64,000 nucleotides of DNA. Source: Scyliorhinus canicula. Taxonomy: Eukaryota. The notes beneath the pieces are model-generated. The model did no database searches. It was not told the origin of the DNA and saw only the letters and a program-made list of their open reading frames with translations. Both the position numbers and the translations under genes were made by a program. Positions 26,209 to 61,888 of this stretch are shown here, piece by piece; the stretch's first letter is position 1, and each line of letters starts with the position of its first letter. The stretch is taken from the NCBI RefSeq assembly GCF_902713615.1, contig NC_052158.1, positions 18,596,546 to 18,660,545 on the forward strand, given 5' to 3'.

Positions 26209-26284
26209 ATGTCATTGAAAAGAAATGGGACTTCAAGAGTGTGTGCTGTTTACCTTTTCACTTGCAATCTATTTGCTCTGACTG
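26209..26284 (+). CDS. Receptor exon 1 (signal peptide MSLKRNGTSRVCAVYLFTCNLFALT)
   Basis: ATG in aaaATG context; donor G|GTAAGC at 26285; phase 1 matches exon 2. Confidence 0.75.
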
Positions 26285-27008
26285 GTAAGCGTTACTATTC
26301 CTGTACAAAATGTAAACTTTTCCATTTGCTCGGATTGTGAAAGAGTTGGAGGGATTGTCTGGGATAAGACATCAGGGTATAATTTTGAGGAAAACTATAG
26401 TATTATTATTATTTAACGAAATATATTTACAGGCATTAAGTGGCGAAACTTATTTTTTGTTTTAATGTTAATGTAATTAACATTAATTTTAGTTTCGAAA
26501 AACATTGAATAAAAATCGCAAGGCGATGGAGAAAGCGCGGGAAAGTGGGTCTAATGGGAAACTTTCTTTCAAGCAACCGGCGCTTGGACACATTGAGCCG
26601 AATGACAATTTGCTGAAGTAAAACTGGTCAAAATAATTCCCGCCGGCTGGTTCACACATTTAATCCTGGTTTTTACATCTTCCCAGTTGGTGTGTAGATG
26701 TGATGAAATGGTTCAGAAATGTTTTTTTGAGTTAGTTCTTCCAGAAGTAGGAAATGTTGCTGTGGAAGGTTCTGGACTGTTGCTGATGTTCGAGTCCGCT
26801 CCAGTTACAGTAAATTGTGGAGCACAATGATCCCAACATTGTTCCCAATGGATCTCAAACCAGCATCATGTGGTGTGGGGAAATTGAAGATACAGGAGAT
26901 GTTTATTTCAATTACACACAGTTATTCGCTTTAGCTTAAATAGTGTTTATATTTATTATTCCGATGTTGTTACCTTTATATTAAAACAATGATTATCTCC
27001 ACCTTTAG

Positions 27009-27374
27009 CCGCTGTAACACTGAGGGTGAACCAGGACAGTGTGAATGGAACCGTTGGTCAGTCTGTGCTCCTATCCGCCTCTTACACAGTCTCAAACTCA
27101 AGCGATTACCTCCGGATTAGATGGATGAAAGCTGGGACTAGAATTGTGGAATATAAATGTGGAAGGACAACAGACAACATCACTAATTGCGGTCACGTCC
27201 TGGATGTTCCTGATCATTCCAAACATCGAGTTGATTTTTTCCCAGAAAATGCCTCATTGTTGCTGAAAGATTTACAATTTAATGACAGCGGGATTTATGA
27301 ATTAACCATTGCCTACTCAGGGGGAACAGAAAAGGCCTCGATAATGTTAACAGTCCAGCCCAACACCGGAATGG
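27009..27374 (+). CDS. Receptor exon 2: Ig V-set domain of CD2/CEACAM/HEPACAM type (no canonical B-F disulfide)
   Basis: Acceptor tctccacctttag|cc and donor G|GTAGGT; motifs GTVGQSVLLSA, IRW, RVDFFPENASLLLKDLQFNDSGIYELTI; phase 1-1. Confidence 0.93.
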
Positions 27375-27899
27375 GTAGGTACATTCCCAGTGTGTCAATT
27401 AGTTTTGCTCAATTATTGAGGCATTTTTAAAAATCACAATCTAGTAAATTATACAAACCAGTGCCCACTGGAGTCGAAATTGAGTAACTAATTTATTTCG
27501 GAGCAGTGTGAGGCTTTTTTGAATTCTATTTTCTACAATTCCGGTGTAAAGTCATTAGGTGTAACGCATATTAGAAAATGTTCATGCCGCTTATCGCTTC
27601 ATATACTTCATTGCAGTGGATGGAAAACTGAAAGGGTGAATCCTGTATCTAATCCTATTCAGGAAATTATATCCCCTTCAGGTCATTTCACTAAATTAAA
27701 GTCAGTATTAAATCCAGCAGAATGTTCGAATACAGGAGACCCATTGTGCCTGTCCAGACTATCTGACAGGGATATCAAATTAGTTCACCTTCTCTGTCCT
27801 TACCGCTATCCAAATGTTTCCACCAATTATCTGTTCAATTCCATTTTGAAATTTATTCTTTATTTGTTTCCATCGGCGTTCAATCAATGCATTCAAAAA

Positions 27900-28500
27900 T
27901 CATAACATCTGGTTGAGATTTGTATTTCTTTCATGTCTCCTCTGTGGCTACTTCCAGTTGCCCGAAATCGGTGTCGCCTGGTCACCAACCTACTGCCACT
28001 GAAAATACTCCTGATTAATCCATCATGAATTTGAACGCATCTCTTAAAATTCTCTGTGTTAAGGAGAACCACGCCATCGCTCTAATCTTTCCACATCATA
28101 TTATATCCCCAGTAAATCCCCTCCCTGTCGAAGGTTTAACATCCTTCCTAAAGTGTGGTGCCCAGAACTGGGCACAAAACTCCAGCCCAGACCATGCAGA
28201 GTTTCATAAAGATTTAGCATATCTTCCGTGCTCTTGAAATCTATGCCTCTCGGTATAACGCGGAGGATCTTGTGTTTAACAGTCTTTTCAACTGTCCTTT
28301 CATCTTCAAAGATTGTGTTCAGCACCCCATTCAGAACGATGCAATTGATTTATATTTACTTTCTTTATTTGTCCGATCACCGTGGATCACTTGGCATTTA
28401 TCTATGTTAAATATGATCTATGTTCATGTGCAGTCTGTTACCATTTTCCTCATTCTTGGTATACACACGTGCTGCTCATTCATCGAAAATGTGATCTACT
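27900..28500 (-). mobile_element. Old CR1 LINE fragment
   Basis: GIDFKS...LYETL...WAPHFRKDV on the minus strand. Confidence 0.65.
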
Positions 28501-29079
28501 GTCCACTGTTATAGCGTGCTTATTGACCATTTACGTTTAATTGAAAGACAAAAGGGCAAACTTACACACTAGTAAAACTTAAAATACCTCTTCACACAAG
28601 ATTAATGCTTTACAGAAAAGTTCTGTAAATATGCTGCCTTTAAACAAACTCGGCAAGTATATGGGAACCAAGAGGAAATATTAGAGAGGATTGCCAGGGT
28701 GCACAAGTTACTGGGAGGGCCAGGTAGCACTGGCATAGGGAAGAGTAAATTGATAGGTGAAGGAAGAGTAAGGGAGATTCCGTGTGGAGTTTGCACATTC
28801 TCCCGGTGTCTGCGTGGGTCTCACCCCCACAACCCAAAGATGTGCAGGGTAGGTGGATTGGCCATGCTACAAAGCCCCTTAATTGGATTTTTTTCCCAAA
28901 CAGAGTAAGGGAGACAGTAATGACATCAAAATCAGGGTTACTGTGCATTTATATGAATGTGCCAGTATAGAAAATTACACGGGAATTTACTCATGGAGGC
29001 AGAAGGCATGGTTTCAGAATTAAATACTTTCCATCTGTCTTTACCAAGAAGGTAAATGTTACCCAGGACATGGTGACAC

Positions 29080-30860
29080 ACCGAGGAAATTCTGTCTGTA
29101 GAAGTGTTCAAAATTGATAAGGAGGAAGTGTTAAATAGACTATTGGTAGTTATAGTTGACAAGGCATCAGGACCAGATGAGATGCATCCAAAGCTATCGA
29201 AGGAATTTAGAATGGAAATTTCCAGGACCTTGGTCATAATCCTCCAGTCTTCTCTCAACTCAGGGTATGCATCAGGGGACTGGAGAATTACAAACATTAT
29301 AACTTTGTTCAAAAAATGTTGTAAGGGTAGCCCCCGCAATTACACATCAGTCAGTTTAACGTCAGTTGTGGGCAAGCTTCTAGAAACAATTATTCATAAT
29401 AGAATTAGTAAGTCACATGGAAAAAATATAGTTTGATTAGGAAGAGCCAGCCAGGATTTCTAAAGTGGAATCGCCTTTAACAAACTTGCTGGAGTTTTTT
29501 GAGCGGTAATAGAGAAGGTCAACGAGGGTAATTCTCTTGATGTGGTGTACACGGTCTTTTAAAAGGCATTCGATACACATTGCCACACCGCAGACTTGTG
29601 AAAAAGGTCATGGATTAAAGGGACAGTAACAACATGGATACAAAATTGGCTGAATAATAGGAAGCAGAGAGTAACGGTCAATGGATAGTCTTTGTGCTGG
29701 AGGAATGTGGTGTTCCCCATTGATCGGTATTGGGGCCCTTGATAAATAATAATGATCTAGGTCTTGGTTATAGGGGATGATTTAAATGCTGGTGGATGAA
29801 GCAAAACTTGGAAGTATTCTAAACTGTGATAAGGACAGTGTAGAACTTCAAAAATACACAGATAAGTTAGTGGAGTAGGCAGATAGGTGGCGGATGAAGT
29901 TCAATGTGAATAAGTGTGAAGTGATGCATTTTGGAAGAATGAACATGGAAAGACAATATAAAATAAAGGGTAAAATTATTAAGGGGTATGAGTATGGGAA
30001 CCTAGGTGTATATGTGTTTTTTTTTGTTCATGGTAAGTGGGTGTCACTGGCTAGGTCAGCATTTATTGCCCCCTCCCTGAGGGCATTTAAGAGTCAACCA
30101 CATTGCTGTGGGTCTGGAGTCACATGTAGGCCAGACCAGGGTAAGGACAGCAGATTTCCTTCCATAAAGGACATTAGTGAACCAGATGGGTTGTTATGAC
30201 AATCGGCAATGGTTTTATGGTCACCTTTAGACTTTTGATTCCAGATATTTATTGAATTCATATTTCACCATCTGCCATGGCGGGATTTGAACCCGGGTCC
30301 CCAGAGCATGGGGAGAACCTAGGTGTATATGTGTATCAATCATTGAAGGTGGCAAGACAGACGGAGAGAGCAGTTAATAAAGCATATAGTATTCTGGGCT
30401 TTATTAATAGGGGCATAGAGGACAACAGCAAGGAGGTTATGCTGAACGTATATAAGAGTTAGACTTCAGCTGAAGTATTGTGTACAGCTCTGGGTGCTAC
30501 ACTATGGGAAGGTGTGAACACATTGTAGAGAGTACAAAAGTTTTACAAGAATGGTTCCAGGGATGAGAAACTTCAGTCATGCGGATAGATGGGGAGAGGT
30601 TGGGCCTGGTCTCCTGGGAGAGGAGAAGGCTGAGAGGAGATTTGATAGAGATGTTCAAAATCATGCGGGGGCTGGACAGGGTATCTGGGGAGAAACTGTT
30701 CCAGCTCATAAAAGGGTCAAGGACGAGAGGGCACAGCTTTAAAGTGATTTGCCAAAGTAGCAATTGTGCCGTGAGAAATAAAATATTTTCACTCAGCAAG
30801 TGGTTGGAGTCGAGAATGCAGCTGCCTGGAAGTGTGATGAAGGCAGGGTCAATGGAAGCA
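29080..30860 (+). mobile_element. Degenerate CR1 LINE ORF2 with a nested short insertion
   Basis: KASGPDEMHPK...NYTSVSLTSVVGK; MKFNVNKCEVMHFG; RRRLRGDLIEMFKIM. Confidence 0.85.
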
Positions 30861-32370: not shown

Positions 32371-32544
32371 ATGACTTTGCAGTAGTAACAATGAGCAGTG
32401 GTCGAATGGCAATCAAACGACTAAAACCTTACATGTTGCACAATACAGGCAAAGACCGAACATGGGTACTTCCAGTCATCATTCTACTCACTGGCCTTGC
32501 TGTTAATTTTACCGTCTTGTTGCTGATTGTGAAAGTACTAAGAG
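32371..32544 (+). CDS. Receptor exon 3: stalk plus transmembrane helix (WVLPVIILLTGLAVNFTVLLLIVKVLR)
   Basis: Acceptor cttcctttactag|at and donor G|GTAAGC; phase 1-1, in frame with exon 2. Confidence 0.88.
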
Positions 32545-32631
32545 GTAAGCAGCAACAATGTGACTCACTGCAGGTAACATGCAGATAAACTCTGTATTTG
32601 TTTGTACTTTCTAAGTATATACATAACTCTA

Positions 32632-35984: not shown

Positions 35985-36040
35985 GTTGGAAGCGAACACA
36001 GGAACCAACAGGAAAGAGGAATGGTCCCGAGGATAGTCGG
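35985..36040 (+). CDS. Receptor exon 4 (56 nt, membrane-proximal cytoplasmic GWKRTQEPTGKRNGPEDSR)
   Basis: Acceptor ttttctccttttag|gt and donor CGG|GTAAGT; phase 1-0. Confidence 0.85.
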
Positions 36041-36479: not shown

Positions 36480-38035
36480 CTGTCTGTCCGCTGCGTAAGG
36501 GTCACAATCGGCGGGAATGGAAAACCCCTCGGACGGAAAGGGCGGAAAATCCCCCCATTATCTCGAGAATAATCCAGTTCAGGCATTGTGAAAGTCGGGG
36601 GTGCGACCCGCGGGTGGGCCATGGGCAGGTGTCGGGAGGGTCGCGGGGCCGTCTGTCACGGCGCTCCCGATTGCACAATTCCGCGCGCAGCAGCCGGCTC
36701 TTAACTATGCCGGCTGCGAGCGTCCTTTTTACCATACAAATAAAATGCGGCCGCACTGCCCGACCGTGCCCGCCAATTGGTGCACATGTGCAGAAGCCGG
36801 CATGTTCAAGCATATTTGTCTCTTAACTTCATTCTGCAAATGATCAGGGGCGGGATTCTCTGGCCGTTCCCGCCAGGAAGATCTGTTGGTCCTGTGGACA
36901 GCGACCCGTTGCCGCAGGTTCCCCGCCAGCGAGGTTACAAACAACGGAAAACCCGTTAACAGCGGCGGGACCGGGAAATCCCGGCCAGCCAATGGTGGGC
37001 CACCTCCATCACTGCAAAATTCCCTGGGCTGGATTCTCCGTTTAAGCGACTAAGTGCCGGCGCAAACAGAGACTTCGCGGGAGCTGTACAACGGGAAAAT
37101 CGGTGCCAACCACTCACCGATTCTGGGACTGGTGAGGGGTTAGCAGTGGCCCCGGGTGACACTCCCGGCTCTTGCACTGAAAACAGCCGGAGAATGGGCA
37201 GATCCCGGGCCGCGCATGCGCACAGCTGATGACCTGCAGCGGTCAGCCGTACAACATGGTGCCAGCCATGCGTGGAGCCGACCCGTCATCCGCGATGCCA
37301 CAGGCCAGCCACTGGCCAACCCCCACCAGCCCCCGCGGAAGCCACCTCGACCAGTGGCACAGATCCCGGCCGAGTGTGGCGGTGCTGGACACACCGGGGG
37401 CGGTATTCTCCCCCCCACTCTGAGTGGGAGAATCACCGGGGCACCGCGCATGTCCCGCCACACCGCCCCGACACCCGCAGCCGATTCTCCCACCACCCCC
37501 CAAACCAGCGCGGCGAGAATCGCTGCTCAGAGAATCGCCGCTCGCCATTTGCAACAGGCGAAAGGCGATTCTTCGGCCCGGATGGGCCGAGCGGCCAGCC
37601 CAACACGACGGTTCTCGCCGGCGCCGTCCACACCTGGTCACTGCCGGCGGGAACTGCGCGGGAATGCTGGGGGGAGGGGGGGCGGCCTGTGGTGGGGGGA
37701 GAGGGATGTACCAGCACTGGGGGGGGGGGGGGTTGGAGGCCTCCTATGGGGTCTGGCCTGCGATCGGTGCGCACCGATCAGCGGGCCGGCCTCTCTGAAG
37801 GAGGATCTCCTTTCCTCCACCACCCCGCAAGATCCATCCGCCATCTTCTTGCGGGGCGGCCTCGGGGGGAGTATGTGACGTCATTTATGCGGCGCCGCTT
37901 TTATGCAGCGCCAAGGCCCGACGCGCATAAATGGCATATCGCCGCTCCTAGCCCCTAGGCTCCAACATCAGAGAGAAACACTCCAATTTTCACTCTGGCG
38001 TCGGCACTTAGACTCCCGTTGGGAGAATTGCGCCC
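36480..38035. mobile_element. Nested cluster of GC-rich Harbinger-type MITEs
   Basis: TIR-like starts at ~36848, ~37026 and 37398 and a TIR end at 38021-38035; boundaries are approximate. Confidence 0.7.
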
Positions 38036-39057
38036 GGGTTCCAGACCGCTGAGGTCACACGTGTCTCGCGCCGTTGGGAACTCAGCACATCGGGTACGGA
38101 CCATCGCGGAAGGGCCTGCTGAGGCCACACCAATGCCGTTGCAACGTGGGTGGGGGAGGAGCGAAGAAAAAAAAACAGTCTTTCCCCCAACTATCCCCCA
38201 CCATCACCACCTATTTTGTCTCATCACCTAAGTTTGATATTCAGCAACTTCTTCCTACTTTCAAATGAATAATGACAATTTTGAATAACAGTGCTTCCAG
38301 CATTGATCCTTCTTCAATCTAAATATCCCATTACCACTTTTATTTGTTTTCTATTGAGCCTCTTTATTTTCCATTCAAGCATTTGAACTTGACTCCACAG
38401 GCCTTTGTCATAAGGTTATCCTGTGGTACCCTATCAAATGCCTTTAGAAAATCCAAGTAGACCGGGATTCTCTAGTCATTGGGTTGCTGTGTTCCTGCTG
38501 GCAGCGCACTCCGGCCCATGGCTTTCCCAATGGCATTGGGTGGTTTCTATGGGAAATCACTATTCAATTTAGCTCCTAACTCTTTATACTCCCTCCTCAA
38601 GATGGCGACTGGGGGCTTTTCGCAGGAACTTCATTGCAGTGTTGATGTAAGTGTTAAACTTGTGACAATAAAGATTATTATTATTATTAGATGTCTCCAC
38701 TCAACTTTTCTATGTCATTGGTTTGACATGGAGAACTAGGCCTGGGCCTTGTTCCTCCATTTCATGATTTATGTCCAGCTAGTTTTTAAAAATAAATTTA
38801 GAGTACCCAATTAATTTTTTCCAATTAAGAGGTAATTTAGCGTGTCAATCCACCTACCCTGCACATCTTTTGGTTTGTGGGAGTGAAACCCACGCAGACA
38901 TGGGGAGAATGTGCAAACTCCTCATGGACTGTGACCCAGAGCCGGGATCGAACCTGGGACCTCGGCACCGTGAGGCAGCAGTGCTAACCACTGTGCCACG
39001 GTGTTGCCCACGTCCAGCTAGTTTTAACTATATCTTACCGTGGTACTTGCTAGGCAG

Positions 39058-41551: not shown

Positions 41552-43100
41552 GCAATAACGACGTGCTCACTGAAGCTTAGTTTGGGTTCTGCCAGGGACA
41601 CTCAGCCTCTTACATCATTTCAGTCTTGGTTCAAACATGGACAAAAGAGCTGAACTCAAGAGGTGAGGTGAGAGTGACTGCCCTTGACATCAAGCCAGTA
41701 TTCAATTGAGTATAACATAGAAAAACTGGAGTCAATGGAAAAGCTCTGCTGGTTGGAGTCACACCTGGCGCAAAGGAAGATGGTGTGGTTGGAGGAGGTC
41801 AATCATCTCAGCTCCAGGACATCACTGTTGGATTTACTCAGGGAAGAGAGAAGCAAAAATAGACATTGGACCTCTGGAAAATGTGGCTGGACAAGTAATA
41901 ATAGGAAACAAAGAGATGGCAGAGGAACTGAATTGTTACTTTGCATCAGTCTTCACGGTGGAAGACACCAGTGGGACACCTGAGCTCCAGGAGAATCAAG
42001 GGGCAGAGGTGAGTGCAGTGACCATCACTAAGGAGAATGTTCTGGGTAAACTGAAAGGTATGAAGGTGGATAAATCACTTGGACTGGATGGACCACAACC
42101 CAGGGTCCAAAAAGAGATAACTGAGGAGATTGTGGAGGCATTGGTGGTGATCTTTCAGGAATCACTGGAGGCAGGGACGGTGCCAGAGGACTGGAAAGTG
42201 GAAAATGTAACACCACTGTTTAAGAAGGGAGGGAGGCAGAAGATGGGAAATTACAGGCCGGTTAGCCAGACTTCGGTTATTGGTAAGATTTTAGAGTCCA
42301 TTATTAAAGATGAGATCGCGGAGTACTTGGAACTGCATGGTAAAATAGGACTGAGTCAGCACGGCTTTGTCAAAGGGAGGTCATGTCTGGCAAATCTGTT
42401 AGAGTTCTTTGAAAACGTAACAAGGAAGTTAGACAAAGGAGAACCAGTGGACGTGATTTATTTAGATTTTCAGAAGGCCTTTGACAAGGTGCCGCATACG
42501 AGGCTGTTAAATAAGTTAAGAGCCAATGGTGTTAAAGGTAAGATCCTGGTATGGATAGAGGATTGGCTGACTGGCAGAAGGCAGAGAGTGGGGATAAAGG
42601 GGTCTTTTTCAGAATGGCAGCCGGTGACTAGTGGTGTGCCTCAGGGGTCTGTGCTGGGACCTCAATTTTTCACAACATACATTAATGATTTGGAAGAAGG
42701 AACTGAAGGCACTGTTACTCAGTTTGCAGATGATACAAAGATCTGTAGAGGGGCAGGTAGTATTGAGGAAGCAGGCAGGCTGCAGAAGGACTTGGACAGG
42801 CTAGGAGAGTGGGCAAAGAAGTGGCAGATGGAATACAATGTGGAAAAGTGTACAGTTATGCACTTTGGAAGGAGAAATGGGGGCATAGACTATTTTCTAA
42901 ATGGGGAAATGCTCAGGAAATCAAAAGCACAAAGGGACTTGGGAGTCCTTGTTCATGGTTCACTTAAGGTTTATGTGCAGGTTGAGTCAGCAGTTAGGAA
43001 GGCAAATGCAATGTTAGCATTCATGTCGAGAAGGCTAGGATACAAGAGCAGGGATGTACTTCTGAGGCAGTATAAGGCTCTGGTCAGACTCCATTTAGAA

Positions 43101-43410
43101 CATAGAACATACAGTGCAGAAGGGGGCCATTCGGCCCATCGTGTCTGCACCAACCCACTCACTTCCACCCTATCCCTGTAACCCAATAACCCCTCCTAAC
43201 ATTTTTGGGCATGAAGGGCAATTTAGCATGGCCAATCCACCCAACCTGCACGTCTTTGGACTGTGGGAGGAACCGGAGCACCCGTAGGAAACCCACGCAG
43301 ACACGGGGAAAATGTGCAAACTCCGCACAGTCAGTGACCCAGCGGGGAATGGAACCTGGGACCCTGGAGTTGTGAAGCCACAGTGCTAGCCACTTGTGCT
43401 ACTGTGCTGC
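43101..43410 (-). mobile_element. V-SINE inserted in CR1
   Basis: Reverse complement of the consensus, splitting VRLHLE|YC. Confidence 0.85.
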
Positions 43411-43581: not shown

Positions 43582-44283
43582 TCCTACCTGGGCGAGTCTC
43601 AGTTTAATTCAATTTAAGGTGCTGCATAGGGCGCACATGACTGGGGCAAGGCTGAGCCGGTTCTTTGGGAGAGAGGACAGGTGTGTCAGGTGTTCAGGGA
43701 GCCCAGCAAACCACACCCACATGTTTTGGGCGGGCCCTGCGCTGGAGGGTTTTTGGAGGGGCATTGCGGAGACGCTGTCAAGGGTGGTTGGTTCCAGGGT
43801 TGAGCTGGGCTGGGGGCTCACAATATTTGGGGTAGCAGTGGAGTCGGGAGTGCAGGAGGCGAACGAGGCTGGTATTCTGGCCTTTGCGTCCCTGGTAGCC
43901 CGGCGCAGGATTCTTCTACAGTGGAAGGATGCGAGGCCCCCGGGCGTGAAATCCTGGGTCAACGATATGGCTGGGTTTATCAAACTGGAGAGGGTCAAGT
44001 TTGCCTTAAGGGGGTCGGTGCAAGGGTTCTTCTGACGGTGGCAACCGTTTCTAGACTTTCTGGCGGAGCATTAGAGGATGGTCAGCAACAGCAGCAATCC
44101 GGGGTGGTGGGGGGATCGTTTTTTCCTTTATCGGGTGTGTATATTTGTTCTCATGTTAATTATTTTTGTTAATTTATTGTTTTTGTATTGGGGGGAGGTC
44201 TACTGTTCTTATTTTTATTTTTCTTCTGTTCTTGTTGTTTTAAACTTGCTGAAAACTTGAATAAAAATTATTTTTTAAAAAAA
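43582..44283 (+). mobile_element. 5'-truncated L1/Tx1 insertion (ORF2 C-terminal zinc-knuckle region, 3' UTR, polyA)
   Basis: TSD AGAAGGATGAG at 43571-43581 and 44284-44294; IQFKVLHR..CVRCSGSPANHTHMFW. Confidence 0.92.
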
Positions 44284-45376
44284 AGAAGGATGAGAGGGGA
44301 TCTTATTGAAACTTACAGTATACGGCGAGGCCTCGATAGAGTGGATGTAGAGAGGATGTTTCCACTTGTAGCAATAACTAGACGCAGAGGGTGCAATCTC
44401 AGACTAAAGGAACGATCCTTTAAAACAGAGGTGAGGAGGAATTTCTTCAGCCAGAGGGTGGTGAATCTGTGGAACTCTTTGCCGCAGAATGCTGTGGAGG
44501 CCAAAACACTGAGTGTCTTTAAAACAGAGAAAGATGGCAGCACGGTGGCGCAGTGTGTAACACTGCTGTCTCACAGCGCTGAGGTCCCAGGTTCGATCCT
44601 GGCTCTGGGTCACTGTCTGTGTGGGGTTTCCACATTTTCCCCGTGTGTGCTCCTACAGCCCATAAATGTGCAGGGCAGGTGGATTGACCATGCTAAATTG
44701 TCCCTTAATTGGAAAAAAATGAATTGGGTACTCTAAATTAAAAGAAAGCAGAGAAAGATAGGTTCTTGATTAATAAGGGGATCAGTTCGAATCCTGCCCT
44801 GGGTCAATGACCGTGTGGAGTTTGCACATTCTCCCCCTGTCTGCGTGGGTTTCACCGCCACACCCAAAGATGTGCAGGTTAGGTGGATTGGCCACACTAA
44901 ATTGCCCCTTAATTGGAAAAAAAATAATTGGGTACTCTAAATAAAAAAGATTTTTAAATAAGGGGATCATGGATTATGGAGAGAAGGCAGGAGAATGGGG
45001 ATGAGAAAAATATCAGCCATGATTGAATGGGGGAGCAGGCTCGATGGGCCGAGTGGCCTAATTCTGCTCCTATGTCTTATGGTCTTATTGGGTAGTGTCC
45101 TTAGCCCAACCATCTTCAGCTGTCTCATGAATGGTTTTTCTTTCATCAGAAGGTCAAAAGTGGGAATGGTTATTGGTGACTGCAGAAAGTTCCGAATCAT
45201 TCACGACCCCTCCAGTGAAGCAGTCCATGTCCGAATGCAGCAAGACCTGGACAATACCCAGGCTTGGGCTAACAAGTAACATTCGTGCCACACAAGTGGC
45301 AGGGAGTGACCATCTCCAACAAGAGAGTATCTAACCATTGCCCTTTGTTATTAAATGGCATGACCATCACTGAGTT

Positions 45377-45728
45377 GGGCAGCAGGGTAGCATGGTGGTT
45401 AGCATAAATGCTTCACAGCTCCAGGGTCCCAGGTTCGATTCCCGGCTGGGTCACTGTCTGTGTGGAGTCTGCACGTCCTCCCCCTGTGTGCGTGGGTTTC
45501 CTCCGGGTGCTCCGGTTTCCTCCCACAGTCCAAAGATGTGCGGGTTAGGTGGATTGGCCATGTTAAATTGCCCGTAGTGTCCTAATAAAAAAAGTAAGGT
45601 TAAGGGGGAGGTTGTTGGGTTACGGGTATAGGGTGGATACGTGGGTTTGAGTGGGGTGATCATGGCTTGGCACAACATTGAGGGCCAAAGGGCCTGTTCT
45701 GTGCTGTACTGTTCTATGTTCTATGTTC
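45377..45728 (+). mobile_element. HE1-like V-SINE
   Basis: Full consensus. Confidence 0.87.
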
Positions 45729-46673: not shown

Positions 46674-47331
46674 GGGCGGTATTCCCCCCCCCCCCCCCCC
46701 CCCCCCAACACGCCGGGCGGGAGAATCGCCGGGGCATGCGTGAATCGCGCCACGCCGCCCCAACCCCCGCACGTGATTCTCCCACCCCACTGAAACCAGC
46801 GCCGCGCGAATTGTGCCGGGCCGCTCGGAGAATCGCTGCAAACGTCAAGCGGCGATTCTCCGGCCCGGATGGGCCAAGCGGCCGCTCCAACACGTCAGGT
46901 TCCCGCCGGCGCCGTCCACCCCTGGTCGCTGCCGGCGGGAACTGTGCAGGAATGCTGGGGGGGGGAAGGGGGTTCCCTCACTGGGGGGGCCTCCGATGGG
47001 AACTGGCCACGATCGAGGCCCACCGATCGGCAGGCCGGCCTCCCCCCCCCCCCCCCCGGGGCCTACCTCCTTCCGTGGCCGGCCCCAGAACACTGGCGCC
47101 ATGTTGGTGAGGGGCCGCCGTGCGTAAGAAGTTTCCCGCGCATGCGCAGGATGGCACGGCCCATTTGGCGCCGCATAGGGACGCTGGAGTGGCGTGAACC
47201 ACTCAAGCGCCATGCTGGCCCGCTGTGGGGGCCAGAATAGGTATTGCCCGGGACCTGTTCGCGCCGTCATGAAACGCGACAGCATTCACAATGGCGCAGG
47301 CACTTAGTCCCGGGAGCGGAAAATCCCGCCC
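46674..47331. mobile_element. Harbinger-type MITE with a 3-bp TSD
   Basis: GGGCGGTATT...AATCCCGCCC flanked by GAT on both sides. Confidence 0.8.
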
Positions 47332-49175: not shown

Positions 49176-51266
49176 TAACATCGATGTTTAAATAAATTTG
49201 GAGGACCCAATTATTTTTTTTTCCAATTAAGGGGCAATTTAACGTGGCCAATCCACCTACTCCGCACATCTTTGTGTTGTGGGGGTGAAACCCACACAGA
49301 CATGGGGAGAATGTGCAAACTCCACACGGACAGTGACACAGGGCCGGGATTCAAACCCGGGTGATCAGCGCCACAGTCCCAGTGCTAACCACTGGGCCAC
49401 ATATAGCCGTCCCACTCAGCATGTTGATGAAGGCCCCCCCCCATCCCCAGCGATTGGACTTGGAACAAGTGCTGGGGAGGCGTTTAAAAGATCCGCCCCC
49501 TCTGAATAGAGGATTCTGCCCAGAGTGTGTGGCCAGAGTGAGAGTACAGGGGTGTGAGATAGAGCACGAGGGTATGAGAGAGAGAGCATGGGTGTGAGAT
49601 AGAGCACGAGGGTATGAGAGAGAGAGCATGGGTGTGTATGGGTGATAAGTGAAACTCAGTGTTGGGGGTTCAGTCTCAGCATTTCGGGTGGAGAGGTCCG
49701 GGTTGCCTCACAGGCCTTAGCGGCTGCTCAGACACCACCAGCTTCCAACCCCTCCTGTTACTGTCCTAGTTCCTTCCTCGGCTCCTCAATCCTCGCCATG
49801 TGCAAATTTTGATTCCTCCGATCCCTCGCCTTCTGATAACCCTGGAGCCCATCATCAATGTACTCGATACAGGCTTCAGATACCTCCCCTGTTTGTGACT
49901 GTTCTATCTGCCACCAAACACCCAATTGTGTGAGGGACCGATCACACTTTGCACACCAGGGTGTGCGCAACTGACACAGCTTAGACTTCACCGTCCCTGG
50001 ACCCGGACCAATACACACATGCCTGGACCATGATCCACAAAGCTCCAGAACTGCCTTTGCATCCTGGTCCCAACAATGTGCCGCGCACTATCCCAGTACA
50101 TTTCTCATTCCCTGTTAAATACCAACCCCAGTCTTGTGTCTCTATCCATCTCTTCCCTCCTGGGCTCTAGTTACCCCTCTGCACCCGAGTCACGATGTGT
50201 CTCTGTCCATCCCTTCCCCTACGTCCTCCAGTTAACCTCCCCTCCCGCCAAGTCAGGAGTCTAATTCCACCCCTTCCCTTACCCCTGTCCAATCACGCTC
50301 AACGCCCCAGCCAAGTGTCTGCCTTCCACCTCCCTATCCCTGCTCACTGAGCAGCCTTGGCAAGATGGGTCATAGAAACATAAAGAGCAATGCAGTGAAA
50401 GATATGGGAACACTGTGTGTATAAACCTCGAAAGCATGAGTGTAGTCCCCAAGATCAGAAATTCCCACCCGAGTCAACGAACCTTTACATGGTCCGTCAA
50501 ATTCTCTGTCCCGCGCCCAGGACGATTTGGGTGGCCGGCGAGGCTGGCAAATTTACCCCTATATCTATCAAATGTACATTTGAAGGCTTCCAAAATCAGG
50601 AACTAGTTTTAGATCTACTATGATCTCAGCCTGGTGCCTGACTATAAATTAGAACATTACTGTTTGCTCTCCTGCTGCTTGCTGTATGATGCAATTGACT
50701 TTCCTACAGACAGGGGAAGGAGTGGCCTCGTGGTAACGTCGGTGGAGTAGCGCCGGGTGATGTTCTCAGGGTAACCTGAGTTCGAATCCTGCCACAGCGG
50801 ATGGTGAAATTGAATTGAATAAAAATCAGGGGGAAAAAACATTGCTCATTGTTGTAAAAAAGAAAATTAGTTCTGCCTTGGGTGACTGTGTGAAGTTTGT
50901 ATGTTGTTTGAGTGGGTTTCCTCCAAAGATGTGCAGGTTAGGATGAGGGTTCGGGTTAGGGTTTGGGTTAGGGTTAGGGTTGCATACTTCTTATCTTTAC
51001 CTCGGCACTGATCACATCCATTCCCACATAGGATGTGCAGGTTAGGTGGATTGGCCATTCTAAATTGTCCCTTAGTGTGCAGGTTAGGTTATGGATAATG
51101 GGGCGGCGGGGTAGTGGATTTGGGTTAGAAGCTCTTTCCAGAGAGTCAGTGCAGACTCACTCGGCCGAATAGCCTCCTTCTGCACTGTAGGGATTCTATG
51201 AGCCAGAGGGTTGTGAGGAACAGAATGCCACATCTTCCATTAACTTGTATTTCTCTTTGATAACAG

Positions 51267-51383
51267 AAATCGAAGGACGGTGCTGACCTGCTGTACGCAG
51301 ATATCAACTGTCCTCGACCTACTGAGCCAAAAAGGCAAATCCATGTTCCCGAAGATAAAACAGAATATGCTTCAGTGCAGAAA
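51267..51383 (+). CDS. Receptor exon 5: ITIM (LLYADI) plus ITSM (TEYASV)
   Basis: Acceptor ttgtatttctctttgataacag|aaa; phase 0 matches exon 4; donor AAA|GTAGGT at 51384; read-through gives a 22-aa extension and then a stop. Confidence 0.85.
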
Positions 51384-53130: not shown

Positions 53131-53169
53131 GCACATTGATGGCTTCCCTTCACAGTGACCAAACACACT

Positions 53170-53522
53170 GTGGGCAACACGGTAGCATAATGGTTGGCAC
53201 AATTGCTTCACAGCTCCCAGGGTCCCAGGTTCGATTCTCAGCTTGGGCCACTGTCTGTGTGGAGTCTGCACGTTCTCCCCATGTGTGTGTGGGTTTCCTC
53301 CGAGTGCTCCGGTTTCCTCCCACAGTCCAAAGATGTGCAGGTTTAGCCATGCTAAATTGCCCTTAGTGTTCAAAAAGATTGGAGGGGATTACTGGGTTAT
53401 GGGGAGGGTGGAGGTGTGGGCTTGGGTAGGGTTTGGCTTGGGGTTAGGGTGCTCTTTCCAAGGGCAGGTGCAGACTCAATGGGCCGAATGGCCTCCTTCT
53501 GCACTATAAATTCTATAATGAT
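53170..53522 (+). mobile_element. HE1-like V-SINE
   Basis: Consensus match. Confidence 0.85.
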
Positions 53523-54983: not shown

Positions 54984-56013
54984 CAGAGATCTGCACAAAG
55001 CCCATCGCTCCTGCATGCTGGTCAGCCTAATCCTGAGCAAAATTGTTCTGTCCCCGCGTGAAGATTTCATCGATCACCTCTTGGGTGGATTTGTGTGGGA
55101 ATGGTTGCAAAATCCCACGGAGGTCATCTGTGGAGACATGGAAGGAGCATGGGGGTAAAAACTGAGCGACACTGGCAGTGGATGTCCTTCAAGTCCCCGT
55201 GGTGCCATGTCCTGCAGAAAATGGACATGCTAGTCTTTGGCGGCACTGGTTCTTGGATAACTGCAGACATTTTAAGTACCGTTGAGTCACCTCCAACCAA
55301 CTGTGTGGCTCATCCTCTGCCTGCAGAGTAGCCCAATCCACCCCTCCCTCTTCAGAATTCTGCTCCTGCCCTTGGCAAGCCAGGTGCTTCCATTGGCCTG
55401 CCCATCCTCCTGCCTATAAGCATGAAGAATGACAACAAGATCTCCAAGCCCCATGTTTTGTACGACATTATCAAAGAGAGAGACTTGTCAGTTAGCATTT
55501 GTCTTCCGAAGACAACTCTTCGCCCATTCATCACCTGAAGCTGCCTCCCAAAGTCCACTGACTCAGGCCCTGACCACCACAGTCCTTACTTAGCATTCTG
55601 CTTTGTCAACACCCCCCCCCCCCCCACATTTGCCCCACACCACATGACCGAGTGGCCACAGCTTTGACCACTCTACTCCATACTGACCTCTTAACTCAGG
55701 CATTTGTTTTAGTCCAAGGCCTAGCACTCAACGTGGCCTACGGGTGGCACTTGACAATATGCACCTCAGCACACAGCCAAGGATTAGGAGCACTCTCTTC
55801 AGACAATACGCCATTGCCACTTTCTAAGGCGATCTAGTCGCTTCCCCAGTCGGACAATGGTACAGGTACACCATGGCAGTCTCGATTTTGGAACTCAGAA
55901 CACCAAGGGTTAAATACGGAGTAGCAATCAGTGGCACTCACGCACAAAAGTGTTGCTTGAGTGGATATAATTGCATGCCAAAGCAGAGTCTCGGCATGTC
56001 AATTGAGTTACAG

Positions 56014-56365
56014 CTGGGCAGCACGGTAGCATGGTGGTAAGCATAAATGCTTCACAGCTCCAGGGTCCCAGGTTCGGTTCCCGGCTGGATCACTGTCTGT
56101 GTGGAGTCTGCACGTCCTCCCCGTGTGTGCGTGGGTTTCCTCCGGGTACTCCGGTTTCCTCCCACAGTTCAAAGATGTGCGGGTTAGGTGGATTGGCCAT
56201 GCTAAATTGCCCATAGTGTCCCAAAAAAATAAGGTTAGGGGGGGGTTGTTGGGTTACGGGTATAGGGTGGATACGTGGGTTTGAGTGGAGTGATCATTGC
56301 TCGGCACAACATCGAGGGCCGAAGGGCCTGTTCTGTTCTGTACTGTTCTATGTTCTATGTTCTAT
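56014..56365 (+). mobile_element. HE1-like V-SINE
   Basis: Full consensus. Confidence 0.87.
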
Positions 56366-57160: not shown

Positions 57161-57941
57161 GGGCGCGATCTATCGGCCACGCTGCGCCCGACAAGCAGGT
57201 CACCGCCACGCAATGTGGCTGATAGAAAGCGGGAGACCCTGTTCCCAGGATCTACCCGGCGCACAGCGCCTCACTGCATGGAGCCCTCGATTTTGCGGGA
57301 TGTTGTGATGTAAATCCTGCCCATTGTGGGCGGAATCACTTTTTGGCAGATCTACTTATTAGAGCGAGGCAGCTAGTCTGACTTTAATATGCAGATTCCC
57401 GAGGCACCCGAGGCGTTGGGTTCTATTCCCTTTGCCTCGGAGATCTTCAGTGAGTGCTGTTCAGTACTGGACTCTACACATGGGAACCAGACGGAGGAGC
57501 ACTCGTGGGGGTCTCCCAGAAGATTGGAGGCCCCCAGGTGCATGCTCCTTGGGAAGAGTGGTACCCTGACATTGCTGGTGACAGCTGGGCACCCTGCCAG
57601 TACCACTTGGGTGCCAGCCTGGCACTGGCAGGGGCAGGGTGCCAGGTTGGTAGTGCCAAGCTGGCATTGTTTCCACAGTGATCATCAGGCTGTGTGGGTG
57701 TTGGGGGAAGATTGGGAGCATCTGCAGACCCTGCCATAGTGAATTTGCGGGGGTTGATGGCTGGGGCTCTAGAGATGGGGATATCATTTAAAAAGTGGCG
57801 TTCTGATCTCCTGCTACACTGAGAGGTTCTGTCGAGCGGAGCTCCTCGATACAGAAAATGGGGCTCCGTGCGAGTGCCGGGAAACACGTGGCTAAACGCG
57901 CTCGCTATGGGACTTTGTTCCCATTTAGTTAAATCCCTCCC
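57161..57941. mobile_element. Older Harbinger-type non-autonomous element
   Basis: Degenerate ends gggcgcgat...aaatccctccc; no matching TSD. Confidence 0.45.
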
Positions 57942-58581
57942 ACTACACTTTAGATGCCAACAGAATTCTTATAATTGGAGATCAAATCAGTTGTGAACCC
58001 ACATTTCCAGTCACTATTTCCATATTGTTCCTTGCCCGCTGGAGAGCTGACAGAGATGGTATTCTCTGCCTCAGCCTTCCTGCAGTCCATTCATGCCTCA
58101 CTGCATGGAGCCCTCGCCTCTGTACACTCCTCTAATGTACACGTGGTGCAAAATATCAAAGTTGGTAGCTGTGACTAACAGATCAAGTCACAGTCTTATC
58201 TGCTCTTCTTCACCTTCATCCTCAGATTGCTCTGTCTAGCCAGGACGCAGATCTTCTGCGTTTGAAAGTTGACCAGACATTTCCGCTTCCTATCCACCCA
58301 CCTTACCTTCTGCATTTATTATCTCCGAGAGGTTGAAAAGATACGTTGTGCATAAACATACCTTCAACCTGGTGAGCTCTACAAAGCCAGCTGGCCATGC
58401 TGACTGCCGCATATAAATAGTTCAGAAGATCTTATCCCCCAGACATCCCTGGAGATGGAGTGTTACCTGTCCCTTGCCTGGTTACAAACTCCCTCCTATG
58501 ATGTATTGTTCTGTAAGAGATAAGAAAGGCTGTTGGCAAGTGTGTTGCAATGTCTGTATGTGAAGTGCCTGTATTAGATTT

Positions 58582-58849
58582 TGTGGTGAACGTATTCATC
58601 TAATGCATGAGCTGTCTGTATAATGATGTGACCTATGACCTGGAAGTGATGATACGGGCTACTTCCAGGTACTGTACTGGAACCCCAGTCGGCTCCGCCT
58701 CTGGCTCCGCCCTCACCGGGGCCATATATAGACCGGCCTCCTGTGGGTGGCACTCATTTGTACAGCCGACTCTGGCAGGCGAGTTCATGCTTAATAAAGC
58801 CTAATGTTCACTCGCTCTCACGGTCTCACGGTGAATTGACGGTATAACA
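58582..58849 (+). mobile_element. Solo LTR (268 bp) with a 5-bp TSD
   Basis: TGTGG...TAACA; TSD GATTT at 58577-58581 and 58850-58854; TATA-like catatatag and AATAAA inside. Confidence 0.88.
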
Positions 58850-60665
58850 GATTTATCGCTAGAAATATGGGGAAACTGCAAGGTATGAGGCTTGGCGCGG
58901 TGATAAATATGTGCAGGGGATGCGGCACCACTGAATGTTAGGTATGGGTTCCAACCTCTAGATAGTACTGATGGATAAATAATGGGATGTCAATAGATGG
59001 CGTGGTGCATTTGAAGATGGAATTACTGAGGGCAGCATGGTGGCGCAGTGGGTTAGCCCTGCTGCCTCACGGCACCGAAGTCCCAGGTTTGATCCCGGCT
59101 CTGGGTCACTGTCCATGTGGAGTTTGCACATTCTCCCCGTATATGCGTGGGTTTTGCCCCCACAACCCAAAGATGTGCAGGCTGGGTGGATTGGCCACGC
59201 TAAATTGCCCCTTAATTGGGAAAAATGAATTAGGGACTCTAAATTTAGAAAAAAAAGAAGATGGAACCACTGACCTTGACCACACTTGTGAGGTTATTGA
59301 ATTTTTTTCTAGCAGTACAGCCATGTTTTCAGGGCTCACTTCCTTGCGTACACCTCCAAGGCTAGCTGCCCCCATTTCCTTTGCAGTATATGCAAGGTGG
59401 ACATTTGGCCTCTGTAGAAATATGGCATCGCTCTTCCTTTCCTTTTTTTTTGAATAAATTTAGAGTACCCAATTATTTTTTTTCCAATTAAGGGCAATTT
59501 AGCGTGGCCAATCCACCTAACCTGCTCATCTTTTGGGTTGTGGGGGTGAGATCCACGCAGACATGGGGAGAATGTGCAAACTCCACACGGACAGTGACCC
59601 GGAGCCGGGATCGAACCCGGGTCCTCAGCGACATAGGCAGCAGTGCTAACCACTGCACCACCGTGCCGCCCTACTCTACCTTTCCACCACAACATGGAAC
59701 CTGCAGGTGCTCTCTCTGAGTTGCTGCTTCATTGATCCTCTTTGTTCCATATGACAAATGTTTAGAGAGATTGTTCCGCTACCTTCTGCAGCTACAACCC
59801 ACCGTCCCTTTAAATAGTGCTGCCTGGCTCTAAGTACAAGCAAGCCTCACACAAATGAGAAATAGATTTGTTTCCAACCATGGGGTTGTGGGGGGTCCAG
59901 GACTCACTGCCTGATAGAGTAGTAGAGGCACAAACCCTCAACTTGTATTAAAGTCATCAACTCATCTGAAGTCTTTAAACCTTCAGAGCTACGGGCCAAA
60001 TGTTGGAAAGCGGGATTCGACTCTGTGCCAGGTTTTCCAGCCAGCTCAGACATGATGGGCCAAGTGGCCTCCTTCTGTGGCATCAACTTTCTCTGATTCT
60101 GTGAAACCCGGCCCCACACTGAGCATGTAATCAGTCAGCAGCACGCATAGTGTTGAACTGCACACCACAATTATGGAGATCAAGAGGGTGCATGAGGTTT
60201 GCGTGCGAACTGAATCACTTCAATCTGGCATGGGTAATCACACTTCCTACAAGCTAAAATGCAAGCTACAGCCTTCTCAACATTGAATTCAGAAACTGTG
60301 GCTGTAGACTTTCCCCTTCATCTTGACTATCCCGCCCCCTCCGCCCCCCTTGTTTTCTGTATTCAGTTCCCCTGGCCTGTCCAAAGACTACCCACCCCTC
60401 CCCCACATGGCCACTGTCTCTTGTTCAGTGTTGCCCTGCCTGAGCACCGACAACTGTTTTCCTATTAACACATTCTGCTATCCATCCTTTACCACTACAG
60501 TATTAACACTTCAGTCTCTTATGGCACCATTAACAGCCCCTTCTGTCTCATGCCCGTGATACCTTTGCCAATCCCTTCTTAGCTCCGACCAATCACTGAT
60601 TCGCTATTCTGTCCACCTCCCTCTCCAGCTACATGATTCATCGCCACAACCGCTACCACCTAGAA

Positions 60666-61148
60666 CAGGGGTGGGCAAACTACGGCCCACGGGCCGCATG
60701 CGGCCCGCCAAAGGTCTTTATGCGGCCCACCAAGATCAAGTCATTAAAAAAAAAAATAATAATTTTAATTTTTTTTTAATTTTAAGGTTAATGGGGGGGG
60801 GGGCTGTTGGGTTACTGGTATAGGGTGGATACGTTGACTTGAGTAGGGTGATCATTGCTCAGCACAACATGTGTTTCATGTGAAGTTTCTACTTTAAAAT
60901 ATGAATTAATAAAAATTAATTGCTTTTTTTCTTTAAACTGAGTTACTTTGTTTTTCAAATAAATGTGTTTCATTAAAGTTTCTACTTTAAAATATTAATT
61001 AATAAAAATTAATTGCTTTTTTTTTCTTTAAAAACCTTTTATTTTGGCTATTTTAAATATTAATTATTTTACTTAATATACTATGCGGCCCTTTAAAATT
61101 GTGAATTTCTGAATGTGGCCCTTGCACGGAAAAGTTTGCCCACCACTG
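60666..61148. mobile_element. hAT (Charlie-like) MITE, 483 bp
   Basis: TIR CAGGGGTGGGCAAAC / GTTTGCCCACCACTG; 8-bp TSD ACCTAGAA at 60658-60665 and 61149-61156. Confidence 0.93.
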
Positions 61149-61424
61149 ACCTAGAAGGTCAGGGCAGCAGATACCTGCGAACCGCACGACCTGGAGGTTT
61201 CCCTCCAAGTCACTCACCACCCTGATGCTGTTCCTTCACTGTGGCTGGGGCAAAATCCTGAAACTCCCTCCCTAACAGCACTGTGGGTGTATCTACACAT
61301 CAGGGACTGCAGCAGTTCAAGAAGGCAGCTGACAGGCAACTAGAGATGGGCAATAAATGTTTGCCTAACCCGCATTGCCCACATCCCGCAATGAATAATA
61401 AATAAATAAATAAATAAATTCTAT

Positions 61425-61560
61425 CCCTTTTCAGTTCTGTAGAAGGGTCAATGGAAACATTAACTCTGTTTCTCTCTCCACAGATGCTGCCAGACCTGTT
61501 GAGTTTATCCAGCATTTTCTGTCTGTATTTCAGATTGCCAGCGTTAAACAGTATTTTCCT
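61425..61560 (+). mobile_element. Old Penelope-like element 3' end with a decayed hammerhead core
   Basis: ctgtagaagggtca..tggaaacatt followed by ctctctccacagatgctgcc; a related tail is at ~15000-15100. Confidence 0.55.
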
Positions 61561-61750
61561 ATTTCTATTATTCCTTAATTATTGTCTTGACACCATGGTG
61601 AAATTTGCATATTTCACCTGTACTGCTTGTGATTAAATTGATTTGTGTACTTCAGTTAAATATCAGTGTCATAACGGAGGCCAAGATATATTTAGTGAAG
61701 GTTCGATGGAGCTGCACTCTTTCATTGGCTTGTATTTCTCTTTGACACAG

Positions 61751-61888
61751 AAATCAAAGGACAGCACCAATGTGCTATATACAGACATCAATTGGCCTCA
61801 ATTGACTCGGACCAAAAAGAAAATCCATTTCACCAAAGAAACTGTTGTATATGCTACAGTGCAAGTAAATATACCATTTCCACTTTAA
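61751..61888 (+). CDS. Receptor exon 6: paralog of exon 5 with ITIM-like VLYTDI and VVYATV, ending in TAA
   Basis: Acceptor ttgtatttctctttgacacag|aaa is nearly identical to that of exon 5; phase 0; AATAAA at 62075; possible internal donor CAA|GTAAAT at 61865. Confidence 0.82.
   Translation, partial: KSKDSTNVLYTDINWPQLTRTKKKIHFTKETVVYATVQVNIPFPL

What the first reader, a model, noticed from the sequence alone, without database searches (positions are those of the whole stretch)
26209..61888. Unannotated-looking shark inhibitory receptor: single atypical V domain with a PD-1/Siglec-style ITIM+ITSM tail
Seen: six exons with consensus splice sites and consistent phases (1,1,1,0,0) give ~308 aa: leader, V domain, stalk, TM and tail. 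LLYADI...TEYASV matches ITIM then ITSM (TxYxxV). Known: PD-1, SIRPa and CD33-related Siglecs use this tandem to recruit SHP-1/2, but their V domains have the B-F disulfide, whereas CD2/SLAM/CEACAM N domains lack it. Inference: a lineage-specific checkpoint-like receptor combining a CEACAM/CD2-type ectodomain with this tail.
Basis: partly seen in the sequence, partly recalled or inferred. Interest (0 to 1): 0.76.

Follow-up and report, generated by a model that had tools for sequence, protein, structure and literature searches.

The report
Catshark single-V inhibitory receptor gene
This stretch holds an intact six-exon catshark gene for a cell-surface protein with one antibody-like domain and a tail carrying classic "off-switch" tyrosine motifs; the gene seems unannotated, but it belongs to a large, computer-annotated and unstudied receptor family found in sharks, rays, chimaeras, frogs, turtles and birds.

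Summary
Six + strand exons join with consensus splice sites and intron phases 1,1,1,0,0 into a 308-aa open frame. It encodes a leader, a V-set Ig domain without the B-F cysteines, a stalk, a TM helix and a tail. The tail holds LLYADI (ITIM) and TEYASV (ITSM) in exon 5, and VLYTDI and VVYATV in the duplicated exon 6. Every exon has protein homologues in annotated shark and ray genes.

An inhibitory receptor is the best reading, and I found no annotated product of this gene. It is not lineage-specific at family level: relatives occur in elasmobranchs, chimaera, amphibians, turtles, birds and tarpon, under names such as "HEPACAM-like", "CEACAM3-like" or "uncharacterized". The domain-plus-tail combination is not unusual either, because CEACAM1 has it. 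Its ITIM and ITSM also lie in one phase-0 exon, 24 residues apart.

The V domain is closest by fold to VSTM5 and HEPACAM, and by sequence profile about equally close to CEACAM, CAR and SLAM N domains.

There is no transcript evidence.

The scan also noted the tail-exon duplication of this same stretch before (s1-286427).

Verdict: a new member of a known kind, of moderate interest.

The parts
26209..26284 (+). Exon 1: ATG and signal peptide (25 codons plus 1 nt), donor G|gtaagc, phase 1.
   Evidence: Its 25 codons are 100% identical to the first 25 residues of catshark paralogue P0004.
27009..27374 (+). Exon 2: V-set Ig domain, phase 1 to 1. There are no B or F strand cysteines. It has five N-glycosylation sequons and a Cys pair (C76, C86) in the C'-C''/D region.
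   Evidence: Pfam V-set E 3.3e-10. phmmer found 245 relatives, the best being P0004 at 75% identity. Alignment A1 shows the conserved W, R, NASLLL and DSGxY positions. The AF2 model has pLDDT 87.
32371..32544 (+). Exon 3: stalk plus transmembrane helix, phase 1 to 1, donor G|gtaagc. An alternative in-frame acceptor lies at 32449.
   Evidence: P0004 aligns to 32457-32546. The 32371 acceptor recreates the family's 'GMD' junction motif and has the better pyrimidine tract.
35985..36040 (+). Exon 4: membrane-proximal cytoplasmic exon (GWKRTQEPTGKRNGPEDSR), phase 1 to 0, donor G|gtaagt.
   Evidence: P0004 aligns at 75% identity, E 1.6e-9. Ray homologues have the same ...RG|CKxxQEQT... layout.
51267..51383 (+). 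Exon 5 (tail module A): phase 0 to 0, 39 codons. LLYADI (ITIM) and TEYASV (ITSM), with the tyrosines 24 residues apart.
   Evidence: It is homologous to the tail unit of Pristis, Mobula and Hemitrygon proteins.
61751..61888 (+). Exon 6 (tail module B): a duplicate of exon 5, with VLYTDI and VVYATV, tyrosines 24 apart. It is open to TAA at 61886-61888. A donor-like CAA|gtaaat is kept at 61864/61865.
   Evidence: 72% nt identity to exon 5 plus flanks. dN/dS 0.35 between the two exons. P0008 aligns at E 1.3e-9.
62075..62080 (+). AATAAA, 187 nt after the stop: a candidate polyadenylation signal if exon 6 is the last exon.
   Evidence: This is a sequence match only; no reads support it.

Best explanation
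An intact gene encodes a 308-aa type I membrane glycoprotein. It has a signal peptide, one V-set Ig domain that lacks the canonical B-F disulfide, a short stalk and one TM helix. The tail is about 105 aa and is built from two tandemly duplicated exon modules, each with two tyrosine motifs 24 residues apart: ITIM+ITSM, then ITIM+ITIM.

It is a previously unlisted paralogue within an elasmobranch-wide multigene family. That family is part of a wider non-mammalian vertebrate family with HEPACAM/VSTM5/CEACAM-like V domains.

The most likely mechanism is inferred, not shown. The V domain binds a cell-surface or microbial ligand through its GFCC'C'' face. Src-family kinases then phosphorylate the tail tyrosines. 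The paired phosphotyrosines dock the tandem SH2 domains of SHP-1/SHP-2, which dampen activating signals, as in CEACAM1, PD-1 or SIRP-alpha. Inclusion or skipping of the in-frame modules would tune signal strength.
For: - Gene model: six open exons, consensus splice sites, phases 1,1,1,0,0, 308 aa.
- V domain: Pfam V-set E 3.3e-10. All family-invariant residues are kept. The fold is confident, pLDDT 87.
- Exon-by-exon homology to RefSeq proteins of other sharks and rays that join the same parts: P0008, P0013, P0012, P0185.
- Motifs fit the ITIM and ITSM consensus as given in PMC13278318.
- The two tail exons diverged with dN/dS 0.35 at dS 0.93, and all four tyrosines are kept.
- CEACAM1 and Xenopus Ceacam301 encode ITIM+ITSM in one phase-0 exon with the same 24-residue spacing.
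- Sharks have SHP-1, SHP-2 and SHP-2L (PMC12151841).
Against:
- The runs that hold the V exon best belong to a study whose run X18 holds more of the tail-exon stretch than an exon alone allows (0.64 against at most 0.26), so that study is probably DNA.
- Only two runs guessed to be RNA hold small shares of both the V exon and the tail stretch.
- No annotated product of this gene was found.
- The nearest paralogue, P0004, is tail-less.
- The introns are long (15 and 10 kb) and full of repeats.
- The 3' end is unproven.
- No ligand, phosphorylation or expressing cell type is known.
Confidence: 0.65

Rival explanations
1. It is a true CEACAM family gene: the catshark counterpart of CEACAM1, the inhibitory founder of that family.
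For: - The best PDB profile hits are CEACAM1, CEA and CEACAM6.
- NCBI names several relatives 'CEACAM3/4/5-like'.
- The ITIM+ITSM exon has the same phase and 24-residue spacing as CEACAM1 and Xenopus group 1 Ceacam301.
- PMC5112662 says Xenopus group 1 N domains are closest to cartilaginous and bony fish CEACAM N domains.
Against: - Single-domain profile scores barely differ: CEACAM6 N 36.5 bits, CAR D1 34.5, CD84 34.1.
- Foldseek ranks VSTM5, HEPACAM and HEPACAM2 first, and CEACAM1 only at ranks 19 and 26.
[quoted passage not shown] Here exon 1 encodes nearly all of it.
- There is no IgC exon in the window.
- Intact relatives exist in chicken and ducks, where PMC13278318 finds no complete CEACAM gene.
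Confidence: 0.2
2. The exons are not one working gene. Either it is an unexpressed or decaying paralogue, or the tail exons are used differently: mutually exclusive, skipped, or spliced to an unseen terminal exon beyond the window.
For: - No RNA support and no annotated product.
- Paralogue P0004 ends by reading through the exon-4 donor and lacks the tail.
- Exon 6 keeps a donor-like gtaaat.
- Ray homologues carry a further terminal exon (NSS...YAQIQI type) that I could not find in the window.
Against: - All exons are open with intact splice sites, including gtaagt after exon 4.
- Invariant V residues are kept.
- dN/dS is 0.35 between the tail exons, and the 40 nt upstream of each are 85% identical.
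- AATAAA lies 187 nt after the stop.
Confidence: 0.15
3. It is a SLAM/CD2-family-like switch receptor that signals mainly through SAP or EAT-2 adaptors on the TEYASV motif, so it can activate as well as inhibit.
For: - The V domain lacks the B-F disulfide, as in CD2 and SLAM.
- There are weak Pfam Receptor_2B4 (E 0.019) and CD84/CD48 profile hits.
- TEYASV fits TxYxxV/I.
Against: - There is no C2 domain exon.
- Only one of the four motifs is an ITSM, and ray homologues have V, not T, at that position.
- The other three motifs are ITIM-type.
Confidence: 0.07

Closest known systems
CEACAM1 and Xenopus group 1 Ceacam301/302 (inhibitory CEACAMs)
   Same: Both have an N-terminal V domain without the B-F disulfide and with an NASLL...D(S/T)GxY core. 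Both have ITIM plus ITSM in a single cytoplasmic exon entered in phase 0, with the tyrosines 24 residues apart. Both have tail-less paralogues that read through a splice donor (compared with P0004). Both show mosaic N-domain identity between paralogues.
   Different: This gene has no IgC-like domains. Its leader is not split one third into the N exon. Bird relatives persist in lineages that lack CEACAM1. The N-domain sequence signal is no stronger for CEACAM than for CAR or SLAM.
VSTM5, HEPACAM and HEPACAM2
   Same: These are the best structural matches to the V domain: Foldseek E 4.5e-10 to 9e-9, 26-30% identity. VSTM5 is again rank 2 among fold clusters. NCBI calls the nearest paralogue 'hepatocyte cell adhesion molecule-like'. 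A teleost hepacam-a is the only classically named hit of the family profile, at 1.2e-15.
   Different: HEPACAM and HEPACAM2 have an added C2 domain and long tails without an ITIM/ITSM pair; that statement rests on my own knowledge. The profile score for hepacam-a is far below that of family members (1e-25 or better).
Unnamed elasmobranch V-TM-tyrosine-motif family (e.g. XP_038672975.1 S. canicula, XP_051899667.1 Pristis, XP_072113453.1 Mobula, XP_072888947.1 Hemitrygon)
   Same: V domains are 51-75% identical. The exon layout is the same: leader, V, TM, cyt1, and a tail unit K..E.A...YAE..WP....KR.IH.PKE.VEYATVQ.
   Different: This copy has no one-to-one orthologue in the sampled species. It sits with P0004 at the base of the elasmobranch clade. 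It alone has T at -2 of the second tyrosine, which makes a canonical ITSM, and it has its own tail-exon duplication.
PD-1, BTLA and SIRP-alpha tails
   Same: All have an ITIM followed about 24-25 residues later by a TEYA(S/T)(I/V)-type motif. The spacing values for these proteins are from my own knowledge.
   Different: Their V or I domains have the canonical disulfide. A true PD-1 exists separately in catshark (PMC12151841).

Membership tests
CEACAM family (CEACAM1-like) | N-terminal IgV-like domain lacking the B-F disulfide | tested here: met
   Ala and Leu stand at the Cys positions in the alignment to B7-H4. No Cys appears in those columns across A1.
CEACAM family (CEACAM1-like) | [quoted passage not shown] | tested here: not met
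   Exon 1 encodes 25 of about 26-27 leader residues, and exon 2 starts at A-AVTLRV. The criterion is quoted.
CEACAM family (CEACAM1-like) | Locus syntenic with LIPE, BCL3 and TOMM40 | not testable with these tools
   The window holds no other gene, and the paralogue loci returned no DNA. Indirectly against: intact relatives exist in chicken and ducks, which lack complete CEACAM genes.
CEACAM family (CEACAM1-like) | ITIM plus ITSM (or ITIM) in one cytoplasmic exon entered in phase 0 | tested here: met
   Exons 5 and 6 are both phase 0, with 24 residues between the tyrosines. Ceacam301 and opossum CEACAM1 are the same.
CEACAM family (CEACAM1-like) | N domain closer to CEACAM N domains than to other V families | tested here: inconclusive
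   Profile scores: CEACAM6 N 36.5 bits, CAR 34.5, CD84 34.1. Foldseek prefers VSTM5 and HEPACAM.
HEPACAM family | V domain plus C2 domain ectodomain | tested here: not met
   Only one Ig exon lies in the window on either strand.
SLAM/CD2 family | V (no disulfide) plus a C2 domain, with several ITSMs that bind SAP | tested here: not met
   There is no C2 exon and only one TxYxxV motif among four. SAP binding is not testable here.
PD-1/CD28 family | V domain with the canonical B-F disulfide | tested here: not met
   Catshark PD-1 is a separate gene.
Elasmobranch V-TM-tyrosine-motif family (unnamed) | Shared V domain signature, the C'-C'' Cys pair, and homologous TM, cyt1 and tail exons | tested here: met
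Inhibitory immunoreceptor (functional class) | Tyrosine phosphorylation and SHP-1/SHP-2 recruitment | not testable with these tools
   Only the motif consensus and spacing are shown.

The most novel reading that the evidence does not exclude
This gene and its tail-less neighbour-type paralogue P0004 may form a pathogen-driven inhibitory/decoy pair. They share an identical leader and the first 29 V residues, and their differences cluster in the BC, C'C''D and G regions. They would belong to an ancient family that mammals lost and that is sister to CEACAM and HEPACAM. If so, the one-exon ITIM-24-ITSM module of CEACAM1 predates the split of cartilaginous and bony vertebrates.
Probability: 0.25. 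Interest if true: 0.6.

Novelty: new member of a known kind. Interest (0 to 1): 0.4.

Why it matters
It adds a probably unannotated inhibitory receptor gene to the catshark. It also points to a sizeable vertebrate receptor family that sits in databases under misleading automatic names and that I could not find described in any searchable paper. If expression and SHP binding are confirmed, the family would help date the origin of the CEACAM1-type inhibitory module. It would also offer a shark example of paired or decoy receptor evolution. As a single gene, it is an ordinary kind of immune receptor.

Tried and rejected
Nothing was laid. They lie inside a SINE copy.
- The run index was inconclusive for expression. 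The best holders of the V exon (X15-X18) belong to a study whose run X18 held 0.64 of an exon-plus-intron stretch, which looks like DNA.
- A word-indexed homologue search with the V exon alone found nothing, because of the tool's length window. The exhaustive search did find relatives.
- A scan for a separate stalk exon between 27400 and 32440 (phase 1 to 1) found only the upstream extension of the TM exon.
- I found no window match to the terminal exon of ray and shark homologues (NSS...YAQIQI type), using tblastn at E 0.01 or better with the homologues then held, P0005 and P0012 among them.
- PDB Foldseek gave only generic V-set hits, with PD-L1 on top. A PD-L1/B7 reading was rejected as uninformative.
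- A PD-1 orthologue reading was rejected: there is no B-F disulfide, and catshark PD-1 lies elsewhere.
- Paper searches for LOC771657 and for 'hepatocyte cell adhesion molecule-like' plus shark returned nothing.
- A TMLHE-named gull gene model containing a family V domain gave no TMLHE Pfam domain, so that synteny lead stays weak.
- I could not build a tree with canonical human CEACAM, HEPACAM, VSTM5 and SLAM sequences, because no tool supplied them by reference.
Full report
**What is there.** LLYADI and TEYASV lie in one + strand frame at 51288-51377. Reading the DNA around each candidate exon and joining them gives six exons:
- 26209-26284
- 27009-27374
- 32371-32544
- 35985-36040
- 51267-51383
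- 61751-61888

Together they make 927 nt, which is 308 codons plus TAA. Every intron begins with GT and ends with AG after a pyrimidine-rich tract. The intron phases are 1,1,1,0,0.

**Protein features.** The protein has a 25-27-aa signal peptide and a V domain with five N-glycosylation sequons. A stalk of about 45 aa follows. The TM helix (WVLPVIILLTGLAVNFTVLLLIV) has no charged residue. The tail contains LLYADI and TEYASV in exon 5 and VLYTDI and VVYATV in exon 6. In each exon the two tyrosines are 24 residues apart.

**The V domain.**
- Exon 2 matches Pfam V-set at E 3.3e-10.
- Aligned to B7-H4, Ala and Leu occupy the positions of the B-strand and F-strand cysteines.
- In a 40-sequence family alignment the invariant or near-invariant residues are all present: W39, R74, N81, S83-L86, D93, G95 and Y97.
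- Most members, including this one, have a Cys pair in the C'-C''/D region. A local disulfide there is inferred, not shown.
- AlphaFold2 run with this alignment gives a confident Ig fold, pLDDT 87 and pTM 0.82.

**Relatives.**
- An exhaustive phmmer search with the V exon found 245 proteins at E 1e-3 or better.
- The best single-V hit is XP_038672975.1, 'hepatocyte cell adhesion molecule-like', from Scyliorhinus canicula (P0004, 75% identity in V). Its leader and first 29 V residues are identical to the window's.
- Other close relatives are 'uncharacterized' RefSeq proteins from many elasmobranchs. These are Stegostoma, Heterodontus, Heptranchias ('A33 antigen-like'), Mustelus, Chiloscyllium, Hemiscyllium, Cetorhinus, Pristis, Hemitrygon, Mobula and Hypanus.
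- More distant relatives (35-43% identity) occur in many groups:
  - Callorhinchus;
  - frogs ('CEACAM3-like') and a caecilian;
  - turtles;
  - many birds, including chicken LOC771657 and ducks;
  - tarpon.
- No mammalian protein passed the family-profile search. The only classically named hit was a teleost hepacam-a at 1.2e-15, against 1e-25 or better for family members.

**Support for each exon.** tblastn of these proteins against the window hits the leader, V, TM, cyt1 and both tail exons. Ray and sawfish proteins join the same parts in the same order...RG|CKxxQEQT...|K.QE.A..YAEL.WP....KR.IH.PKE.VEYATVQ. A pattern scan and self-BLAST found no second Ig exon and no second TM exon in the window. 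The tail exons therefore most simply belong to this gene.

**Duplication of the tail exon.**
- The two tail exons are 72% identical in DNA, and the similarity extends into the intron flanks.
- dN/dS between them is 0.35 at dS 0.93. This rests on 38 codons, so it is noisy.
- The 40 nt upstream of each exon are 85% identical.
- Both exons are in phase 0 to 0 and are multiples of three in length, so either could be skipped in frame.
- Mobula proteins carry an independent duplication of the same unit.

**Open points in the model.**
- The TM exon has a second in-frame acceptor at 32449. I prefer 32371 because it has the better pyrimidine tract and restores the family's 'GMD' junction motif.
- Exon 6 keeps a donor-like gtaaat at 61865.
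- Ray homologues have one more terminal exon, which I could not find in the window. The true 3' end may be the TAA at 61886 with AATAAA at 62075, or it may lie beyond 64000.

**Expression.** This is not shown.
I worked beside those places afterwards.
- The runs holding most V-exon words (X15-X18, one study) are probably DNA. X18 held 0.64 of a 381-nt stretch in which the exon can supply at most 0.26 of the words.
- Two runs guessed to be RNA (X2, X5) hold small shares of both the V exon and the tail stretch. That is weak evidence.
- Two protein searches that recovered the three annotated catshark paralogues listed no product of the window itself. The gene therefore looks unannotated.

**Which known family?**
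- Profile against PDB sequences: the top hits are CEACAM1, CEA and CEACAM6, but those are multi-domain chains. Single N domains score almost the same across families: CEACAM6 36.5 bits, CAR 34.5, CD84 34.1.
- Foldseek against Swiss-Prot models puts VSTM5, HEPACAM and HEPACAM2 first, at 26-30% identity. The fold-cluster library agrees, with CEACAM1 at ranks 19 and 26.
- PDB Foldseek is generic, with PD-L1 on top.
- The cytoplasmic module is CEACAM1-like. In Xenopus Ceacam301/302 and opossum CEACAM1, the ITIM and ITSM lie in one exon entered in phase 0, 24 residues apart, as here.
- Against CEACAM membership, three points stand out:
  - The leader is not split into the N exon (criterion).
  - There is no IgC exon.
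  - Intact relatives exist in Galloanserae, where Zimmermann and Kammerer find no complete CEACAM gene.
- From memory, the chicken contig length given for LOC771657 is that of chromosome 4, not a CEACAM-syntenic microchromosome. This is a lead, not a test.

I therefore file the gene under its own unnamed family, within the HEPACAM/VSTM5/CEACAM neighbourhood of V domains.

**Position in the family.** In a maximum-likelihood tree of 55 V domains, the elasmobranch sequences form one group (support 82/59) and the tetrapod sequences another (91/74). The window's domain and P0004 branch first within the elasmobranch group, with no one-to-one orthologue among the sampled species. Sampling was limited to cluster representatives.

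**Mechanism.**
- Shown: the architecture, the motifs, their spacing and their conservation.
- Inferred from established knowledge of ITIM/ITSM receptors: ligand engagement, Src-kinase phosphorylation, and docking of SHP-1/SHP-2 tandem SH2 domains on the paired phosphotyrosines.
- Sharks have PD-1, SHP-1, SHP-2 and SHP-2L (PMC12151841), so the effectors exist.
- Only module A carries a canonical ITSM. Ray homologues have V at that position.

**Paralogue P0004.** It ends ...DSR|ISGILYRK..., which reads on into what is intron here (window: DSR|gtaagt, which would read VSGILYRK). That suggests a lost donor and a tail-less receptor. Differences between the two V domains cluster in the BC loop, the C'-C''-D region and the G strand, while A-B and E-F are identical. 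This resembles the paired or decoy pattern described for CEACAMs. I could not test it, because no DNA was available for the paralogue.

**Verdict.** The gene is real and probably functional. It is a new member of a known kind of receptor, belonging to a family that is annotated but apparently undescribed. Interest is moderate.

Noticed in passing
window 26209-27374 compared with P0004 (XP_038672975.1): The paralogue P0004 shares an identical leader and the first 29 V residues, and also the E-F strands. It differs in the BC, C'C''D and G regions and lacks the second Cys of the pair. It ends by reading through the exon-4 donor, so it has no tyrosine-motif tail. This may be a paired or decoy arrangement, or patchy gene conversion.
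   Followed up: partly
window, about 25 places, e.g. 13115-13320, 24318-24528, 45373-45590, 53171-53376, 56000-56230: A SINE of about 210 bp occurs some 25 times on both strands at 70-94% identity.
   Followed up: partly
window 41721-43178; also 62627-62944 and 22808-23439: A 486-aa open LINE reverse-transcriptase frame sits in intron 4, with older fragments elsewhere.
   Followed up: no
P0043, P0154, P0155 (Mobula birostris), residues about 190-258; window 6935-7078, 19012-19155, 30597-30749, 44278-44421: The predicted tails of these Mobula family proteins contain a segment that matches LINE-derived repeats in the window. This is probably an exonised repeat or an annotation artefact.
   Followed up: no
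window 36500-38100 and 46701-46972: A GC-rich block (about 59% GC) is open in all three + frames for more than 240 codons. It has a 76%-identical partial copy 10 kb downstream, so it is repeat-like. Both copies lie in intron 4.
   Followed up: no
window 51227-51266 and 61711-61750: The 40 nt upstream of the two tail exons are 85% identical, more than the exons themselves (72%). This suggests conserved splicing signals.
   Followed up: partly
P0224, P0226 (Rissa tridactyla): Gull gene models named 'trimethyllysine dioxygenase' include a V domain of this family. This hints that the bird genes lie next to TMLHE, but no TMLHE Pfam domain was found in P0224.
   Followed up: partly
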